Part shown: one piece after another, positions 3,621 to 60,395 of the stretch
Numbering within the stretch: position 1 is the first letter of the stretch
How the letters are laid out: every line of letters starts with the position of its first letter
Origin: Octopus sinensis
Lineage: Eukaryota
Direction of reading: 5' to 3'
DNA: 64,000 bases
Assembly (NCBI RefSeq): GCF_006345805.1
Contig: NC_042999.1
Location: 25,792,001-25,856,000, forward strand
The notes under the pieces: model-generated
What the model was told of the DNA's origin: nothing
The model's database searches: none
Seen by the model: only the letters and a program-made list of their open reading frames with translations
Position numbers and translations under genes: made by a program

Positions 3621-3669
3621 ATATATATATACACATCCACACCCACACGTATATATATATATATATATA

Positions 3670-12150: not shown

Positions 12151-12562
12151 CTCTTTACTCTTACTCTTTTACTTGTTTCAGTCATTTGACTGCGGCCATG
12201 CTGGAGCACCGTCTTTAATCGAGCAACTCGACCCCGGGACTTATTCTTTTTGTAAGTCCAGTACTTATTCGATCGGTCTCTTTTGCCGAACCGCTAAGTA
12301 ACGGGGACATAAACACACCAGCATCGGCTGTTAAACAATGCTAGGGGTACAAATACAGACACACAACCATAGACACGCATACATATATATACATATATGC
12401 GACGGGCTTCTTTCAGTTTCCGTCTACCAAATCCACTCATAATGCTTTGGTCGGCCCGAGGCTATAGTAGAAGACACCTGCCCAAGGTGCCACGCAGTGG
12501 GACTGAATCCGGAACCATGTGATTGGTAAACAAGCTACTTACCATACAGCCACGCCTGCGCC
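12151..12562 (-). mobile_element. Full-length tRNA-derived SINE family A
   Basis: Reverse complement of 19033-19430. Internal (TA/CA) microsatellite; (AAGAGTA)n-like tail. Confidence 0.9.
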
Positions 12563-13029
12563 TATATGTATACATGATAAGTATAATTGCTTTTTCCTAT
12601 AAATTTTAAGGTACGTGTTTTACGTACATATCTGTGTATGCCTTTTCCACATATGCAAGTATACGGGCGTTTAACCTTATATATGTATACAATTTATACC
12701 TTCTGATATATCTGACTTATTACGTTTATACATTTTGTATGTTGAAATTTGAACTGGCAAAATAGAAATTTATCTATTTCTTTAACTTCACTTGTCTCAT
12801 TCTTTAAGTTAACTTTACGTTGGTTGAAGAGTGAAAGCACAACGGCATTTTTCTGAATAACATCATTTTCTGCAGAATGGATTATATGAACAAGAACACA
12901 TCTCAAAATACATTGTCTGAAGAATGATAAAGAGAGATGGACTAAAGAGGTTATGAAGAGAGAGTGAATGAAAAAGTATGTGAGGGAAAAACAGAGTGGT
13001 AAAAGAAGATAATTGCGAGAAAGAAATAG

Positions 13030-18420: not shown

Positions 18421-19032
18421 TTAGAAGACTGTGTGGGCGGTACTTAGAATATATGTTGCCATTTGACAAAATCAATGATAGTAATCAGTCTGCCCGAGTG
18501 TGTATCATTACACGCAATAATAAATCTTGCAGAACTAGCTGCACGTGTATGCATTTTGCTGATGTTATGCAATGTTGATCTCTCCCCTTTTCTGCTTAAA
18601 CATACACACACACGCGCGCTCACTCACATGCACGCACACATACACACGCTGACACGTATATGCACACACATACATGCACACACACACATACAGATGTGTG
18701 AGTATGTGGATGGATGGTTATGTATGTACGTATGAATATATATAATATTTGTATATATCTTTCTAAAATATACATGTGTCTATGTGTGTACGTGTTGTGT
18801 GTGTTGCGTAGGTTTCTGAATGCTTGCTTGCAGGTGTCTGTATGTTTATTTTTTCTATTGTTTAACAGCCATTTGTGTTTAACGAATCATGACTTAGCAG
18901 TCCGGCAAGAAGAAACTGTTGAAAAAGTACTAAACCTAAAATGTTAAATGGTATCTGAACAACTCTCTTTTTAAAGATTGTGCTCCATCATGAGCACAGT
19001 TCAGCATGGAGACGATATAAAATATTAATTAT

Positions 19033-19430
19033 GGAGTGGCTGTGTGGTAAGTAGCCTGTTTACCAACCACATGGTTCCGGGTTCAGTCCCACTGCGTGGT
19101 ACCTTGGGCAAGTGTCTCCTACTATAGCCTCGGGCCGACCAAAGCCTTGTGAGTGGATTTGGTAGACGGAAAATGAAAGAAGCCCGTCGTATATATGTAT
19201 ATATATATATGTATGTGTGTATGTTTGTGTGTCTGTGTTTGTCCCCCTAGCATTGCTTGACAACCGATGCTGGTGTGTTTATGTCCCTGTCACCTAGCGG
19301 TTCGGCAAAAAGAGACCGATAGAATAAGTACTGGGCTTACAAAGAATAAGTGCCGGGGTTGAGTTGCTCGATTAAAAGGCGGTGCTCCAGTATGGCCGCA
19401 GTCAAACTACTGAAACAAGTAAAAAGAGTA
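19033..19430 (+). mobile_element. Full-length tRNA-derived SINE family A
   Basis: Head ggagtggctgtgtggtaag (A box) and ccgggttcagtccc (B box). Central microsatellite. Tail gcggtgctccag.atggccgcagtcaa..actgaaacaagtaaaaagagta. Resembles tRNA-derived octopus SINEs; I cannot assign a named family. Confidence 0.9.
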
Positions 19431-21900: not shown

Positions 21901-22692
21901 TCGAATAGATTTTTTTTTATACTTCTACATTTTCCAACACTCACACCAATCACTCTCACTGCAACTCTTCATAATTGATGATCGTTAATTAATTTTTCAT
22001 TAACATCTTAGAAATCATCAGATGAAACTAAAATGAATTGTAATCAAGTACTTTTTCAACCCCAATAAATACCCAATAAATATCACACACATCACGTTCG
22101 CGCACGCACACTCACACACCCACATACACATATGTACGTAAGTATAGTAACATATAGTTATTGTATATGTATTTTTTAGTTTCATACGTCAGTTTTCTTT
22201 AAATAGAAGCACATCTTAAAAAGTTGTTGCCTAAATCCTAATATTAAAAGAAAGATATTTGACTAATCTTTACGCGAGAGAAAACGGCATTTTGAGTGAA
22301 TGAGTTTTTTTGTTAGTTGCAACACCCCTTTAACAATTTGTATAATTTGTATTCAAATTTTTCAAGTGTTTAAATTATTTGTTGACGCGTGTGTTGCTGT
22401 GGCTGGTTTGAACGATGGTCATTCTTTGTATAAGAGATTTTATTATTAAATGAGAAAGAAAATAATGATTAATTTTCATGGTGATTTGTGTAATTGCTAG
22501 ACTAGTACAAGACGGCTGCCAGATTGACTTCACAGATAGATTTCTTAATTATCTTTTCTGAAGTGGTCGTATTTCTTCCTGCTAAACAAAATATGCAAAC
22601 TGTTTGCTATACCTAAGCTACTTCAGTTAAGACTAACTTAAGAAAAGTTCCTGGTTGTGCTAGATAACCATTTTCCCTATAATTATAGATAC

Positions 22693-22888
22693 GACTGTCG
22701 CTACCAACGATCGAACGGTCCGGTGAGGTCCTCAGATCTGGCCGACGAGTCCGCTTACGCGCAGCGGCCTTCCGCGCCGTCGTCGGTGCGTTCTCTGATG
22801 GCCCAGAGAAGACGACCGAATCGGATCGCTTAGACGAAGTAAAATTCGTAACAAGGCTTCCGTAGATGAACCTGCGGAATGATCATTA
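22693..22888 (+). pseudogene. 18S rRNA 3'-terminal fragment (helix 44/V9 to the mature 3' end), retrocopy
   Basis: gtcgctacc..cgat.gaacgg...gtgaggtcctc, an expanded V9 hairpin (gccgacga/tcgtcggt), then gaagtaaaa.tcgtaacaagg.ttccgtag.tgaacctgcggaa.gatcatta, the universal 18S 3' end. Substitutions in invariant positions indicate a pseudogene. Confidence 0.95.
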
Positions 22889-23121
22889 AAGGCGGCGAGC
22901 TGGCAGAAACGTTAGCATGCCGGGCGAAATGCTTAGCGGTTTTTCGTCTGCCGTTACATTCTGAGTTCAAATCCCGCGGAGGTCAACTTTGTTTTCGTCC
23001 TTTTGGGATCGATAAATTAAGTACCAGTGGCGCAATGGGTCGATGTAATCGACTTAATCCCTTTGTTTGTCCTTGTTTGTCCCCTCTGTGTTTAGCCCCT
23101 TGTGGGTAGTAAAGAAATAAG
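22889..23121 (+). mobile_element. Full-length SINE family B (tail type 1) fused to the 18S fragment
   Basis: aaggcggcgagctggcagaaacgttagc ... gagttcaaatcc (B box) ... cccttgtgggtagtaaagaaataag. Co-linear with 56227-56457. Confidence 0.9.
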
Positions 23122-24032
23122 AATTATAGATACACAGGGATCTTCGATCAGTGTTCCATGAAGGTAAGTTATATTGCGATCCTAGGATGAAGACGAGTAG
23201 GTGAAGTAAACTCACCATATGCAGAAATTCTGATCCTCGGTGGAAAGAGACATCCGCATTAAGCCGATGAACTATAATAACTAGTAAGTACATAAATTTC
23301 AGAACAGACCTTATTACAACTATCCATACAGGTAAATCAAAACTATTCACCTGAAATTTACGAGGATATTACCATAACTACTAGAATTAGCAATCAGCTG
23401 CACAAATGACCATGCCAGTAAATAAACACTAATTGAGATATTTCTCTAAAGTTCTTATCTAATTACAGAAAAAAAAATATCCATAATAACTTTATTTGAA
23501 TACACGATCTCTATTAACCAATTTTTAACCGACTAAGGCATCCGAATTATCCATCCGACAGCACACAAACCAACAACGAGTTGAACCATTTTACCGACAG
23601 TCAACCGTGCCAGCCTTAGTTTTCGGCGCAAAAAATATAGTAACGTGATATCAACGCACGGTATAGTGAAGACCCTACATCATCGTCAACCGCTCAAAAC
23701 TTATCCTAAAGATATAATAATTTGAGCTTTGTTTGTTCTATAAAAACAAGACATATTCTTCCTGAATTCCGATCAGAAGGAAGGTACTTAGTTGAAGCAC
23801 CTTGTTAGGTCGGGATAATATATGCACCCAACAATATTATGTAAAAACCATGAAACATGTCTGTAGATGTCTGACTAGCAAGGTGAAGCGGCTGACCTCC
23901 CCTGTTCGAAGGTTGTAATGGACGCAGTTTCGTGTCTCATATAGCTAGCTAGAGGCGATGGCTTCTTGGAACTAATCAGCGACAGTTTTAGTCTTATATT
24001 CATAGACTGCCATATTAGTATGGCGATAACTA

Positions 24033-33238: not shown

Positions 33239-33457
33239 AATAAGTGTGCGTGCAGGGTGACCAAAGTCTTATGAGTGCATCTAGAAGTTCGCCAATTTTT
33301 TTTTTGTTCTTTTCTTCCCTTTTACGATCCCTCTTGATCGAAAACCTACGCCACCCCTTTTTTTTCCTGTTTTTTATTCTCTTCATCCCCCAAAAGAAAA
33401 GCTCTACCTTGTAACTTGTCCCATCTGTGTGCAGCCCTGTGTGGCCAATAAAGAAAC

Positions 33458-39089: not shown

Positions 39090-40739
39090 ATGTATGTATA
39101 TATATGTATATACGCATCTATATATATAAACACGCTCCCAAGAAATCTACTAACACAAACAGAAACCGGCTCCCTAAAAAGAAAAAAACACTCATCAGGC
39201 GCATCAAAAGACTCAACAAAAAAAATCAACCAATTAAAATATTCCCACACGCAACATCCACATTCAACAACAATGAAAAGACTAGAGCTGGAAAAACTTC
39301 ATCTGCAGACTAACATGAAAACCTCCATTGAAAATCAAAGAGCTGTGGAGGAACAATGGGTAATCAAAAACATCAAACAGAACCCAAAAGTGTTCTATTC
39401 TTATGCAAATAAGCATAGAACCACTGTCTCACCTATTGGGCCATTGATTGATGAAAACGGCATTCTCCAACACGATGCTAAAGAAATGGCAGAAATACTG
39501 CAGAAACAATATTGCTCTGTCTTCAGTGTTCCCACTGATATTGATGTGAGGGAAACGAACGAAGCTGACTCCCAACACAAAATCGCAGACATAACCTTCA
39601 CTGCCACCGACATCGTAGCAGCAATAAATGAGGTCAAACATTACTCCGCTGTAGGCCCTGATAGATTTCCCGCCAGTCTCCTGAAGGAATGTAGATATCA
39701 ACTTGCAGTCCGTCTGACCAACCTCTGGAGAAACTCGTTAGACGCAGGTTATATACCGAAAAAGTTTCTATCCCAGTTGGTCATCCCGGTTTTCAAACAG
39801 GGAAACAGATCCCTCGCAGTCAACTATCGCCCAATCTCACTCACCTCCCACATCATTAAAGTGTTTGAAAGAGTGTTAAGACCAAGGATAGCTGACTTCC
39901 TGGAGACCCACAAACTCCTAAATTCAAATCAACATGGCTTTCGCTGTGGCAGGGACTGTCTAACACAGCTCTTACACCACATTGAAGATGTACTCAAAGC
40001 CTTGGGAACAGGTTCGAACTCTGACGTCATATACCTTGACTTCAGTAAAGCATTCGACAGGGTAGACCATAACATCCTACTCTCAAAATTGGCAAATGTT
40101 GGAATCCGTGGAAAAGTTCTACACTGGATTCAGTATTTCCTAGCGAATAGAACACAACATGTTGTAGTTGATGGAGTCCACTCAAACCCAGCAAAAGTCA
40201 CCAGCGGTGTTCCCCAGGGAACTGTTTTGGGTCCGCTACTCTTCATAATTTATGTAAACGACCTTTCCAGTGTCGTACATCACTGCAAAGTGAAAATATT
40301 CGCTGATGACACTAAGCTCCAGCAAATCGTCAATGAAGAAGCAGACCGAACTCAACTCCAGTCTGACCTATATGCTGTGAGTCAATGGGCAGACAGAAGC
40401 AAAATGCAACTGAATGAGGGAAAATTTGAGCTGATGCATTTTGGAAGAAATTCCTCACTAAAACAACCATACTCTCTTCCTTCAGGGGAACCGCTCACAG
40501 CCTCTAACAATATCAGAGACCTGGGTGTAATTGTTGATGACGATCTCAGTTGGAGTGCACACATCAACAAGAAGGTCGATACAGCTCGTAGGATGAGTTC
40601 CTGGATCTTAAGAACTTTCCGGTCCAGAGAACAAGGTGTCATCATACCACTTTTTTCATCCTTTGTACGGCCACACCTTGAATACTGCTGCCCACTGTGG
40701 TCTCCTCACACAAGACAAAACATCTCCAGAATTGAGTAA
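39090..40739 (+). CDS. Reverse transcriptase of a 5'-truncated CR1-group LINE (ORF2 without endonuclease)
   Basis: Provided 549-aa ORF: [94 protein letters not shown]. The first residues are microsatellite. The ORF ends at a premature stop plus frameshift. Confidence 0.9.
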
Positions 40740-41325
40740 CCCCAGAGGGCTCTCACTAAACAAATTGAAGGCATGGCTGCTCTCGACTATTGGGATCGCC
40801 TTAAAGCCTTGAAACGTTACTCCCTCCAGCGTCGCCGTGAGCGGTACATCATTTGTACGATGTGGAAAATATACCGCCAACTTTTCCCAAACGACCTAAA
40901 CATTAGCTTCAAGGTTCATCCGAGACTTGACCACGGGCTATACGTCCCCTGCCAAATTCAAGATCACAACATACATGTACACTGCAACATAATTTCTTTT
41001 CCTCAACAGGCCCTGCCCTATTTAACATTGTCCCGAGGGAGATCAAAGAGGAAAAGGATCCCATCAACTTCAAACAGAGTCTGGATAGATTCCTTCAAAG
41101 AATACCAGACAAGCCACCCATAATTGGATACAACTCACCCAACAAGAACTCACTACTTGAACAAAACTGGATACAACTCACCCAACAAGAACTCACTACT
41201 TGAACAAAACTTGACTTAAACAGGATTCGAATAATCCTATCAGGTGGTGCTATTAAGTTAGACATGGCCTGGACCAATCTCTGGTCGAAACATATCTAAG
41301 TTTTATCTAAGTTCTAAGTTTTATA
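39130..41325 (+). mobile_element. CR1-group LINE, 5'-truncated, young but disabled
   Basis: RT ORF plus frameshifted C-terminus (LDYWDRLKALKRYSLQRRRERY; GPALFN..P; FKQSLDRFL..IPD). 3' tail ctaagttttatctaagttctaagtttta. Exact 43-bp tandem duplication at 41125-41210. Confidence 0.9.
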
Positions 41326-41904: not shown

Positions 41905-42316
41905 TTCTGTTATTCTGTTACTTGTTTCAGTCATTTGACTGCGGCCATGCTGGAGCACCGCCTTTAATCGAGCAACTCGACCCTGGGACTTATTCTTTTG
42001 TAAGCCCAGTACTTATTCTATCGGTCTCTTTTGCCGAACCGCTAAGTAACGGGAACATAAACACACCAGCATCGGTTGTCAAGCAATGCTAGGCGGACAA
42101 ACACAGACACACAAACACATACATATATAAATATATAAATATATATATATATACGACAGGCTTCTTTCAGTTTCCCTCTACCAAATCCACTCACAAGGCA
42201 TTGGTCGGCCCGGGGCTATAGCAGAAGACACTTGCCCAAGGTGCCACGCAGTGGGACTGAACCCGGAACCATGTGGTTGGTTAGCAAGCTACTTACCACA
42301 CAGCCACTCCTGCGCC

Positions 42317-42317
<1 letters not shown>
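41905..42317 (-). mobile_element. Full-length tRNA-derived SINE family A
   Basis: Near-identical in reverse complement to 19033-19430, and co-linear with 12151-12562. Confidence 0.9.
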
Positions 42318-42389
<72 letters not shown>

Positions 42390-55199: not shown

Positions 55200-55774
55200 A
55201 TACATTTGTATGTGCGTGTGTTTAGAAATCGAGCGTATTGTCTTATTAATATCGTTTTGCTGGGAAAAAAAATATGTTTAAATATTTAAATGTGCTTTAC
55301 AAATAATTGTCGGAAAGTAAGAAAACAAAAGAAAATGGAGTAGAGAAATCAAATTAAATCAAATATATTTGTATATCCCCAGGTGGAATGTCAGTGATCT
55401 TCGAGTTCTTTGGATTCTATTGTTTTTGTAAATATGCAGCAGAGAGATGTATTTTTCATCTTTTCTTCTCTCTTAAGACTGATATTTCATTCCTTTGCTT
55501 GTTTTACAGCAACATTGTAGGAAATACAATAAATAATGCAGAAGAGTATTGAAAAAAAAAGAGAATAAGCCATTAAGACAAATATGTAAACGTTGTATTA
55601 TTTATTCATACTTTTCCAAGAAATACTTTCACCTATTAAAATGCAGATATTTATGAATTTTTTGCAATATGAATACACCACTACTGACATTTGACCTTCT
55701 AACTTCATGATTATGGTTTTAGAGTCAAATACAGAATTGAAATATATGTCATGGTAATTTGTGATGTTCTTTTC

Positions 55775-56165
55775 TACTCTAGGCACAAGGCCAGAAAGTT
55801 TTGAGGAGAGGGCCTGTCGATTAGAATCGACCCCAGTACTCAACTGGTACTTAATTTATAGACCCCGAGAGGATGAAAGGGAAAGCTGACCTCGGCGGAA
55901 ATTGAACTCAGAACGTAAAGACCGACGAAATACCTATTTCTTTACTACCCACAGAGGCCTAAACACAGAGAGGACGAACAAGGACAGACAAACGGATTAA
56001 GTCGATTATATCGACCCCAGTGCGTAACTGGTACTTATTTAATCGACCCCGAGAGGATGAAAGGGAAAGCTGACCTCAGCGGAAATTGAACTCAGAACGT
56101 AAAGACAGACGAAATACCGGAGCATTTCTCCCGGAGTGCTAACGTTTCTGCCAGCTCGCCGCCTT
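55775..56165 (-). mobile_element. SINE family B: one head, core repeated twice, two different tails
   Basis: Head ends at 56163. Core 56045-56118 is repeated at 55861-55934. Tail type 1 lies between the cores and tail type 2 ends at ~55775. Confidence 0.85.
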
Positions 56166-56226
56166 GGTAATTTGTGATATTGACAGAGAACCAGATATGA
56201 CTAGGCTATATCTGTTTATCTGTTTA

Positions 56227-56457
56227 AGACGGCGAGCTGGCAGAAACGTTAGCACGCCGGGCGAAATGCGTTGCCGTATTTCGTCTGCCGTTACGTTCTG
56301 TGTTCAAATCCCGCCAAGGTCGACTTTGCCTTTCATCCTTCCGGGGTCGATAAATTAAGTACCAATTACGCACTGGGGTCGATGTAATCGACTTAATCCG
56401 TTTGTCTGTCCCCGTTTGTCTCTTCTGTGTTTAGCCCCTTGTGGGTAGTAAAGAAAT
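56227..56457 (+). mobile_element. Full-length SINE family B (tail type 1)
   Basis: gacggcgagctggcagaaacgttagcacgccgggcgaaatg ... ccccttgtgggtagtaaagaaata. Confidence 0.9.
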
Positions 56458-56865
56458 ATATATCTGTTTATCATCTCTAATGCTTCTAGCAAAAAAAACC
56501 AAAGTTAGTGGGTTAATTCGACCAAGTAATTGATACGTGCTATTTTATTTACCCCCAATTTCTTTTTAATGTAAAGTTGTTCGCAAAAAGATTTGAAAGC
56601 ATAGGGCACAACAATTTGTTGAACTCTGTAGCGATTCTACCAGTTTCCTTGCATCGTGATACTAATAACTGCTTCTACTATAGGCACAATAACTGAAATT
56701 CTGGGGGAGCGGGATAGCCGATCATATCATCCCCAGTGTTAGACTAATACTTATTTCATCGATCCAAAATATTGATTTCGACAGCATTTAAAATATTTGA
56801 ACATAAAGAGCCGGATAAAATACCACTAATCATTTTGTCCAAAAAGCTAAATATTCTGTCATCAC

Positions 56866-60199: not shown

Positions 60200-60395
60200 C
60201 AATAGGGTAACAATATTGTGGGAGGAGATGAGTCGATGATATCGAACCTAGTGTTCAACTGGTACTATTTTATCGATCCCAAAAGCTGAAAGGCATTATC
60301 GACCTCGGCGGAATTTGAACTCAGAACGTAGCGTCGGGCGAAATACCCTAAGCATTTGGCCCGGCGTGCTAACTTTACTGCCAGCTCGCTGCCTC
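60200..60395 (-). mobile_element. SINE family B (tail type 2)
   Basis: atcgacctcggcggaatttgaactcagaacgt...aagcatttggcccggcgtgctaac...gccagctcgctgcct. Confidence 0.8.

What the first reader, a model, noticed from the sequence alone, without database searches (positions are those of the whole stretch)
22681..23133. 18S rRNA 3' end fused to a full-length SINE and retrotransposed as one unit (12-bp TSD)
Seen: AATTATAGATAC occurs at 22681-22692 and 23122-23133. It brackets 196 nt of 18S ending exactly at the mature 3' terminus (GATCATTA, 22888), joined with no gap to the first base of a family B SINE. No ITS1 follows, so the template was processed rRNA rather than rDNA. Established: non-LTR RTs can jump end-to-end between RNA templates (R2 RT), and U6/L1 chimeras form by template switching or RNA ligation. 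Inference: the RT copied the SINE, then jumped to the 3' end of mature 18S, or the two RNAs were ligated first. If the junction recurs at other loci, this is an rRNA-headed composite SINE family. I cannot tell from this window whether it is described.
Basis: partly seen in the sequence, partly recalled or inferred. Interest (0 to 1): 0.75.

Follow-up and report, generated by a model that had tools for sequence, protein, structure and literature searches.

The report
18S rRNA–SINE chimeric retrocopy
A dead, one-off insertion in which a reverse transcriptase copied a whole SINE RNA and then carried on along the last 196 bases of mature 18S ribosomal RNA; it is a clean example of a known process, not a new kind of element.

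Summary
AATTATAGATAC occurs exactly twice in the window, at 22681-22692 and 23122-23133. It directly abuts a 429-bp insert. The insert is 196 nt of eukaryotic 18S rRNA (Rfam SSU model 1668-1823, plus the terminal GATCATTA, ending at 22888). A complete 233-nt SINE follows with no spacer. Its first bases, AAGGCGGCG, match the start of four other copies in the window. No ITS1 is present.

Other insertions of this SINE in the window have 13-14 bp duplications. One of them is a second two-part chimera under a single duplication: a full SINE joined to a 5'-truncated related SINE.

The best reading is one target-primed reverse transcription event. The LINE reverse transcriptase reached the 5' end of the SINE RNA, jumped to the 3' end of mature 18S rRNA, copied 196 nt, and joined the target DNA. 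Ligation of the two RNAs beforehand cannot be excluded.

The "rRNA-headed SINE family" idea has no support: there is one copy in the window, and nothing was found in any searchable collection. It could not be tested on the host genome, which is probably an octopod.

This is a new member of the known class of template-switch chimeric retrocopies. Interest is modest.

The parts
22681..22692 (+). 5' copy of the target-site duplication AATTATAGATAC. Its last 1-2 bases (AC) can also be read as 18S sequence, giving microhomology at the 5' junction.
   Evidence: exact, only two copies in the window; Rfam alignment starts at 22691
22693..22888 (+). 5'-truncated copy of the 3'-terminal 196 nt of 18S rRNA. 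It runs from the decoding-centre strand of helix 44 through an expanded V9 helix to helix 45, and ends at the mature terminus ...GGAATGATCATTA. It is decayed, with about 9 changes in 78 universally conserved positions.
22889..23121 (+). It has a box-A-like site TGGCAGAAACG at 22901-22911 and a box-B-like site AGTTCAAATCC at 22964-22974 (both by eye), a core shared with a sister family, and the family-specific tail ...GTGGGTAGTAAAGAAATA plus AG.
   Evidence: 88% and 85% identity to full copies at 56226-56458 + and 56165-55935 -; the start AAGGCRGCGAGCTGG is shared with the copies at 56165 minus and 5716 minus, while 56226 begins AAGACGG; neither Rfam nor ARAGORN calls it a tRNA
23122..23133 (+). 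3' copy of the target-site duplication AATTATAGATAC.

Best explanation
This is a single, dead-on-arrival chimeric retrocopy made in one target-primed reverse transcription event.

A LINE-encoded endonuclease/reverse transcriptase nicked the site ...CCCTAT|AATTATAGATAC|ACAGGG... and primed on the 3' tail of a family-B SINE RNA. It copied the SINE to its very 5' end. Instead of finishing, it jumped end-to-end onto the 3'-OH terminus of a mature 18S rRNA and copied 196 nt. It then left that template near the helix-44 decoding-centre sequence and joined the upstream target DNA through 1-2 nt of microhomology. Staggered second-strand cleavage produced the 12-bp duplication.

Shown: the anatomy, the two native RNA ends at the junction, the single duplication, and a second chimera of the same logic nearby. 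Inferred: which enzyme acted, the order of steps, and jump rather than ligation.

The product has no function. The SINE's internal pol III promoter would start transcription at the SINE's own first base, so the 18S piece would not be carried into daughter copies.
For: (1) One exact 12-bp direct repeat abuts both ends of the 18S+SINE unit. About 1e-5 is expected by chance.

(2) The 18S part ends at the canonical mature terminus and the SINE starts at the family's own first bases, so two natural RNA ends meet with no spacer and no ITS1.

(3) The sequences flanking the SINE alone (CATTA / AGAATTA) or the 18S piece alone show no duplication of their own.

(4) Other insertions of this SINE in the window carry 13-14 bp duplications. 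The unit at 55766-56165 (minus strand) is a full family-B SINE joined at its exact 3' end to a 5'-truncated sister SINE, inside one 13-14 bp duplication. So jumps onto RNA 3' ends recur with this machinery.

(5) Divergence of the two parts is compatible with one age: 12/204 private changes in the SINE against about 9/78 at universal 18S positions, Fisher p = 0.13.

(6) Established knowledge. Non-LTR reverse transcriptases jump end-to-end between templates (PMC8857657, PMC8594491). Chimeric retrocopies with rRNA, snRNA, 7SL or SINE partners, flanked by one duplication, are attributed to template switching (PMC2104539, PMC13174262).
Against: Sequence alone cannot separate a template jump from reverse transcription of an already ligated 18S-SINE RNA.

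The mature 18S 3' end is made in the cytoplasm (NOB1 cleavage, my own knowledge), whereas reverse transcription at the target occurs on chromatin. The rRNA therefore had to reach the nucleus.

Mature 18S carries two dimethyl-adenosines about 20 nt from its 3' end that hinder reverse transcriptases (my own knowledge), yet this region was copied with both A's intact.

The 18S part shows somewhat more change at conserved positions than the SINE part (11.5% against 5.9%). The difference is not significant.

The partner LINE was not identified. The one LINE with an intact RT reading frame in the window (39090-40739) has a different 3' tail.
Confidence: 0.7

Rival explanations
1. RNA ligation first. 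A mature 18S rRNA, or a 3' fragment of it, was ligated to the 5' end of a SINE transcript. The chimeric RNA was then reverse transcribed from the SINE tail and 5'-truncated within the 18S, as proposed for U6/LINE-1 chimeras.
For: It predicts the same blunt junction of two native RNA ends and the single duplication. It also puts the joining in the cytoplasm, where mature 18S 3' ends exist (my own knowledge).
Against: The known RtcB route needs a 2',3'-cyclic phosphate donor and a 5'-OH acceptor. 18S ends in a 3'-OH and a pol III SINE transcript starts with a 5'-triphosphate (my own knowledge), so extra processing steps are needed. The second chimera in the window joins a native 3' end to an internal position of the other RNA, which is more naturally a polymerase jump.
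Confidence: 0.15
2. Read-through template. A SINE had inserted into one rDNA unit right at the 18S/ITS1 boundary. The pre-rRNA containing 18S-SINE was recognised at the SINE tail and retrocopied without any template change.
For: It would give the same final structure. rDNA is a known landing site for some non-LTR elements (PMC12203849).
Against: It requires a random SINE insertion to fall within 1-2 nt of the mature 18S terminus in a unit of many kilobases. Nothing in the window shows such an rDNA copy. The window has a second chimera that needs no such coincidence.
Confidence: 0.05
3. One copy of an amplifying 18S-headed composite SINE family, in which the junction was made once and then propagated.
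For: SINEs whose heads came from ribosomal or small nuclear RNAs exist: 5S-derived SINEs, SINE28 from 28S, and SINEU (PMC4994717, PMC4758252). The host genome could not be searched.
Against: There is only one 18S piece in 64 kb, against about five SINE copies of this group that lack it. The window has no other rRNA-like GC island. The internal A and B boxes lie in the SINE, so pol III would start at the SINE's first base and leave out the 18S piece (inference). Pattern scans of metagenome, prokaryote-genome and viral collections gave only chance hits or none.
Confidence: 0.05
4. Two independent events, a DNA-level rearrangement, or an assembly artefact. Examples: an 18S pseudogene and a SINE that happen to be adjacent, an rDNA orphon, or a mis-join with rRNA-derived reads.
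For: None specific. rRNA pseudogenes and orphons do exist (PMC5322556, PMC5555474).
Against: A single duplication brackets both parts and neither part has its own. No ITS1 is present, so the source was not an rDNA fragment. The 18S piece is mutated at universally conserved positions, so it is not fresh rRNA contamination. The flanks are unique, continuous sequence.
Confidence: 0.03

Closest known systems
Bipartite chimeric retrotranscripts formed by LINE reverse-transcriptase template switching (U6-L1 and related mammalian chimeras; WEIRD-MGL and WEIRD-Mg-SINE in Magnaporthe; PMC2104539)
   Same: Two unrelated RNA copies are joined directly in the same orientation. The whole is flanked by one 10-20 bp duplication. 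The 5' partner ends at its native 3' end. A SINE can be the 3' partner: WEIRD-Mg-SINE has a 12-bp duplication.
   Different: In the classical cases the 5' partner is a full-length small RNA and the 3' partner is 5'-truncated. Here it is the reverse. The 3' partner (the SINE) is complete, so the jump was end-to-end, and the 5' partner (18S) is truncated to 196 nt. There is no poly(A), the host is probably a cephalopod, and the partner LINE is not L1-like in tail type.
28S rRNA/LINE-1, 5S rRNA/LINE-1 and Alu/LINE-1 chimeric insertions in primates (PMC13174262)
   Same: Ribosomal RNA segments of 50-482 nt are fused in sense orientation to a retroelement inside one insertion with LINE hallmarks. 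Template switching or RNA ligation is proposed.
   Different: That catalogue does not mention 18S at all: a text search found 0 occurrences of '18S' or 'SSU'. The 28S pieces come from internal regions, often starting near position 3636, not anchored at the mature 3' end. The retroelement partner there is L1, not a tail-less SINE.
SINEs with heads captured from other RNAs (5S-headed SINE3/Deu-type, SINE28 from the 28S 3' end, SINEU, PittSINE; PMC4994717, PMC4824008, PMC5729268)
   Same: The same proposed birth mechanism: the reverse transcriptase switches from a SINE RNA to another abundant RNA, and the chimera lands with one duplication.
   Different: Those became families because the captured head supplied or kept a pol III promoter. 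Here the captured piece lies upstream of the promoter, has no known pol III promoter, and is present once.
rRNA retropseudogenes (tailless 5'-truncated 18S and 28S copies in human; PMC5322556)
   Same: A 5'-truncated copy of 18S inserted by LINE machinery with a duplication.
   Different: Those are solitary and 3'-truncated or tailless. They are rare: two 18S cases in human. Here the 18S keeps its exact 3' end and is primed through a SINE.

Membership tests
Template-switch chimeric retrocopies (features i-v as listed in PMC2104539) | (iv) Both parts directly joined in the same transcriptional orientation | tested here: met
   18S on the + strand. SINE on the + strand, aligned head to tail with other copies. 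No spacer at 22888/22889.
Template-switch chimeric retrocopies (features i-v as listed in PMC2104539) | (v) Whole chimera flanked by one short direct repeat | tested here: met
   Exact 12-bp repeat abutting both ends. No separate repeat around either part.
Template-switch chimeric retrocopies (features i-v as listed in PMC2104539) | (i) 5' part is a full-length copy of a cellular RNA | tested here: not met
   Only the last 196 nt of 18S are present (model positions 1668-1831 of 1831). The 3' end is native but the 5' end is truncated.
Template-switch chimeric retrocopies (features i-v as listed in PMC2104539) | (ii, iii) 3' part is a 5'-truncated retroelement copy, cut at a random site | tested here: not met
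   The SINE is complete from its first base. The switch happened at the end of the template, not inside it. The second chimera at 55766-56165 does meet this feature.
Template-switch chimeric retrocopies (features i-v as listed in PMC2104539) | 3' part carries the intact 3' end used for priming by the LINE machinery | tested here: met
   The tail ...GTGGGTAGTAAAGAAATA is identical to the other two full copies. The partner LINE was not identified.
rRNA-headed SINE family (SINE28-like or 5S-headed SINEs) | Many dispersed copies sharing the same head-body junction | tested here: inconclusive
   One copy in 64 kb, while other SINE copies lack the 18S. No true hit in the metagenome, prokaryote-genome or viral collections. 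The host genome is not available in any tool.
rRNA-headed SINE family (SINE28-like or 5S-headed SINEs) | Promoter that transcribes the head together with the body | not testable with these tools
   By eye, the A and B boxes lie at 22901-22911 and 22964-22974, inside the SINE and downstream of the 18S piece. The start site is inferred to lie at the SINE's first base. No expression data are available.
rDNA fragment or orphon moved as DNA | 18S followed by ITS1 (unprocessed rDNA order) | tested here: not met
   The SINE starts directly after GATCATTA.
tRNA-derived SINE | Head recognisable as a tRNA | tested here: inconclusive
   ARAGORN finds no tRNA in the window. Rfam gives no tRNA match at E<=1 in 22300-23500. 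Only box-A-like and box-B-like motifs are seen by eye. The fold is not better than shuffles.

The most novel reading that the evidence does not exclude
The 18S-SINE junction is not a one-off. Either this SINE's RNA docks on the small ribosomal subunit so that the reverse transcriptase repeatedly jumps onto the 18S 3' end, giving many independent 18S-SINE chimeras with different 18S truncation points, or one such chimera became a transcribed master copy and founded an 18S-headed composite SINE family in this (probably octopod) genome.
Probability: 0.07. Interest if true: 0.65.

Novelty: new member of a known kind. Interest (0 to 1): 0.3.

Why it matters
The locus is a very clean natural record of an end-to-end template jump. 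Both RNA termini are preserved to the base, inside a perfect duplication, in an invertebrate and with a tail-less SINE rather than mammalian L1/Alu.

It shows that fully 3'-processed 18S rRNA can be reached by a retrotransposon reverse transcriptase. That processing is made in the cytoplasm in the species studied. Nucleolar and ribosomal RNAs are otherwise strikingly rare among retrocopies (PMC5322556).

With the second chimera 33 kb away, it hints that template jumping may be frequent for this SINE/LINE system. Template jumping is the mechanism invoked for how SINEs acquire new heads and tails.

As a single decayed pseudogene it has no expected biological function.

Tried and rejected
**Recurrence of the junction**
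- The pattern GATCATTA-N(0-3)-GGCRGCGAGCTGG found 4 metagenome and 5 prokaryote-genome loci. BLAST showed similarity limited to 23-39 nt around the pattern, so these are chance hits.
- Two scans of viral contigs with SINE head and core words found nothing.

**Protein-database workarounds**
- Exact look-ups of the three reading frames that overlap the insert, two of which cross the 18S/SINE junction, and of the RT reading frame found nothing on record.
- A homology search with the minus-strand frame crossing the junction found no candidates.
- A concatenated query of all open 18S and SINE frames scored nothing at E<=1.

**Organism**
- The RT reading frame's best hit is Argonauta hians at 55% identity. 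That suggests an octopod but does not name the species.
- The 22-kb Argonauta locus has neither the SINE nor an 18S piece.

**Paralogous empty site**
- The flanks are unique in the window.

**Other rRNA or ncRNA fragments next to retroelements**
- The whole-window Rfam scans gave nothing real. The gathering scan even missed the 18S piece, and the E-value scan returned only microsatellite-driven miRNA noise.
- The other GC-rich islands are SINEs of a third family or GT-rich simple repeats.

**Literature**
- Searching for SINE sequence words found no paper.
- Buzdin et al. 2003 (PMC169886) is not held.

**Rejected explanations**
- An rDNA orphon is rejected because no ITS1 follows the 18S.
- A nested double insertion is rejected because there are no inner duplications.
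- Contamination or mis-assembly is rejected because the 18S is mutated at universal positions and the flanks are continuous.

Full report
**Observation**

The window reads ...ttttccctat AATTATAGATAC | GACTGTCGCTACC...GCGGAATGATCATTA | AAGGCGGCGAGCTGG...GTAGTAAAGAAATAAG | AATTATAGATAC acaggg.... The 12-mer is exact at 22681-22692 and 23122-23133 and occurs nowhere else on either strand. Dinucleotide-preserving shuffles give 0.13 exact matches per window. The composition-based chance of this 12-mer at one given position is 5e-7, or about 1e-5 allowing 25 offsets.

Few other exact 12-mer direct repeats spaced 200-1000 bp apart lie outside microsatellite-type sequence. Two of those few are the duplications of other SINE insertions.

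**The 18S part**

A small-region Rfam scan gives SSU_rRNA_eukarya at 22691-22880 on the + strand: 59.4 bits (gathering score 50), E 4.6e-15, model positions 1668-1823 of 1831. The eight unaligned model positions correspond to GATCATTA at 22881-22888. The copy therefore ends at the canonical mature 3' terminus.

It shows a lineage-type expansion in the V9 helix: 43 nt where the Rfam model has 7.

About 9 of 78 universally conserved positions are changed. This is a decayed pseudogene, not rRNA contamination.

The last 1-2 bases of the 5' duplication (AC) can also be read as 18S. That gives the short microhomology typical of 5'-truncated non-LTR insertions.

**The SINE part**

BLAST of 22889-23121 against the window finds two more full copies: 56226-56458 on the + strand (88%) and 56165-55935 on the - strand (85%). 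It also finds partial or sister-family copies at 5716-5501, 60394-60231, 55934-55766, 47512-47345 and elsewhere.

Three copies align from query position 1 and the copy at 60394 from position 2. Three begin AAGGCRGCGAGCTGG, 56226 begins AAGACGG and 60394 begins AGGCAGCG. The three full copies end ...GTGGGTAGTAAAGAAATA. So the SINE in the finding is complete, and the 18S/SINE junction is blunt to within one or two A residues.

A sister family shares the first ~166 nt but has a different tail. Box-A-like and box-B-like motifs are visible by eye at 22901-22911 and 22964-22974. Neither ARAGORN nor Rfam calls a tRNA, and the head does not fold better than shuffles.

**One event or two**

Neither part has its own duplication. 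The bases flanking the SINE alone, or the 18S alone, do not repeat. No ITS1 follows the 18S.

Other insertions of the family have duplications of similar length: TATATCTGTTTATC, 14 bp, around 56226-56458, and ATCACAAATTACC(A), 13-14 bp, around 55766-56165.

The second of these units is itself a chimera. Read on the minus strand, it is a complete family-B SINE ending ...AAAGAAATA, joined directly to a sister-family SINE that starts at about position 50 and runs to its own tail. So twice within 64 kb, a 5' partner that ends exactly at its native 3' end is fused to a retroelement inside a single duplication.

Private divergence of the SINE part is 12/204 (5.9%). The 18S part has about 9/78 changes at universal positions (11.5%). 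The two are not significantly different (Fisher p = 0.13), which is compatible with one age.

**Mechanism**

The simplest account is target-primed reverse transcription that started on the SINE tail and ran to the 5' end of the SINE RNA. The enzyme then jumped end-to-end to the 3'-OH of mature 18S rRNA, copied 196 nt, and made a second switch to the target DNA.

End-to-end jumping is an established property of non-LTR reverse transcriptases (PMC8857657, PMC8594491). Chimeric retrocopies flanked by one duplication are attributed to such switches in mammals and fungi, including ones that contain ribosomal RNAs and SINEs (PMC2104539, PMC13174262).

Prior RNA ligation remains possible, as argued for U6/L1. 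It requires end chemistry that 18S (3'-OH) and a pol III transcript (5'-triphosphate) do not naturally have (my own knowledge).

A SINE sitting exactly at the 18S/ITS1 boundary of an rDNA unit and copied by read-through would give the same product. It needs an unlikely coincidence.

Two points remain open.
- The mature 18S end is generated in the cytoplasm, so the rRNA must have met the enzyme on chromatin.
- Mature 18S carries two dimethyl-adenosines about 20 nt from its end that impede reverse transcriptases. The copy nevertheless reads GAACCTG correctly.

Both statements rest on my own knowledge.

**Family idea**

Nothing supports an rRNA-headed SINE family. There is a single 18S piece in the window, against several SINE copies without it. 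There are no other rRNA-like GC islands. All external searches found only chance hits or nothing.

Since the promoter boxes lie downstream of the 18S piece, pol III transcripts of this locus should start at the SINE and omit it (inference).

The host genome is not in any collection I could query. The family idea is therefore unlikely rather than refuted.

**Host**

The window is 33% G+C and full of TA-type microsatellites and SINEs. The best match of its LINE RT reading frame (39090-40739) is a protein of the octopod Argonauta hians at 55% identity. An octopod origin is likely but not shown.

In Octopus vulgaris, SINEs make up 11.6% of the genome, with a SINE/LINE burst at Jukes-Cantor distance 0.065 (PMC13282606). 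That is close to the 5.9% private divergence seen here, if the host is a related octopus.

**Comparison with known cases**

The locus belongs with template-switch chimeric retrocopies. Measured against the five features listed in PMC2104539:
- It meets direct same-sense joining.
- It meets the single flanking duplication.
- It inverts the usual truncation pattern. The retroelement partner is full length and the cellular RNA partner is truncated, while keeping its native 3' end.

A recent catalogue of primate LINE-1 chimeras reports 28S, 5S, tRNA, 7SL, 7SK, Y RNA and Alu partners but never mentions 18S. 18S retrocopies are rare in human (two cases, PMC5322556). So this is a new instance with an unreported partner pair, not a new kind of element.

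**Verdict**

- The choice between jump and ligation is undecided.
- The family hypothesis is unsupported.
- Interest is modest (0.3).

Noticed in passing
window 55752-56178 (minus strand): A second chimeric retrocopy under one 13-14 bp duplication, ATCACAAATTACC(A). It is a complete family-B SINE (56165-55935) joined at its exact 3' end to a 5'-truncated sister-family SINE (55934-55766). The truncated piece is 91.6% identical to the adjacent copy over the shared core, more than to any other copy.
   Followed up: partly
window 56207-56472: The family-B SINE at 56226-56458 has a 14-bp duplication, TATATCTGTTTATC. Five extra bases (TGTTT, 56221-56225) lie between the 5' duplication and the SINE start. 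They are either untemplated or slipped bases, or the duplication boundary is ambiguous.
   Followed up: partly
window 39090-41310: A 5'-truncated LINE with an intact 549-aa reverse transcriptase reading frame (Pfam RVT_1, E 2e-32). Its best database relative is from Argonauta hians at 55%. Its 3' end has TCTAAGTT-type repeats, unlike the SINE tail, so it is probably not the SINE's partner.
   Followed up: partly
window 33245-33456: A short element whose last ~50 nt resemble the family-B SINE tail (78%, ...TGTGGCCAATAAAGAAAC), followed by a long (ATCT)n run. It may be the 3' end of the partner LINE or another SINE sharing that tail.
   Followed up: no
window 12381-12590 (-), 19011-19210 (+), 42131-42340 (-): A third, unrelated SINE-like family of about 170 nt (GGAGTGGCTGTGTGGTAAGTAGC...GGTTCCGGGTTCAGTCCCACTGCG...). 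Each copy is embedded in (TA)n microsatellite, which suggests a target preference for TA repeats.
   Followed up: no
window 22693-22888: At universally conserved 18S positions the copy has about 11.5% changes, several of them transversions (C>A twice, G>T twice, G>C). The attached SINE has 5.9% private changes. The difference is not significant (p = 0.13). It could reflect faster decay of GC-rich sequence or reverse-transcriptase errors on a modified rRNA template.
   Followed up: partly
whole window (method note): The whole-window Rfam scans, both gathering and E-value, did not report the 18S fragment, although it scores 59.4 bits (above the gathering score of 50) when only 1.2 kb is scanned. 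The E-value scan instead returned 118 microsatellite-driven miRNA false matches. Decayed rRNA fragments can be missed in 64-kb scans.
   Followed up: yes
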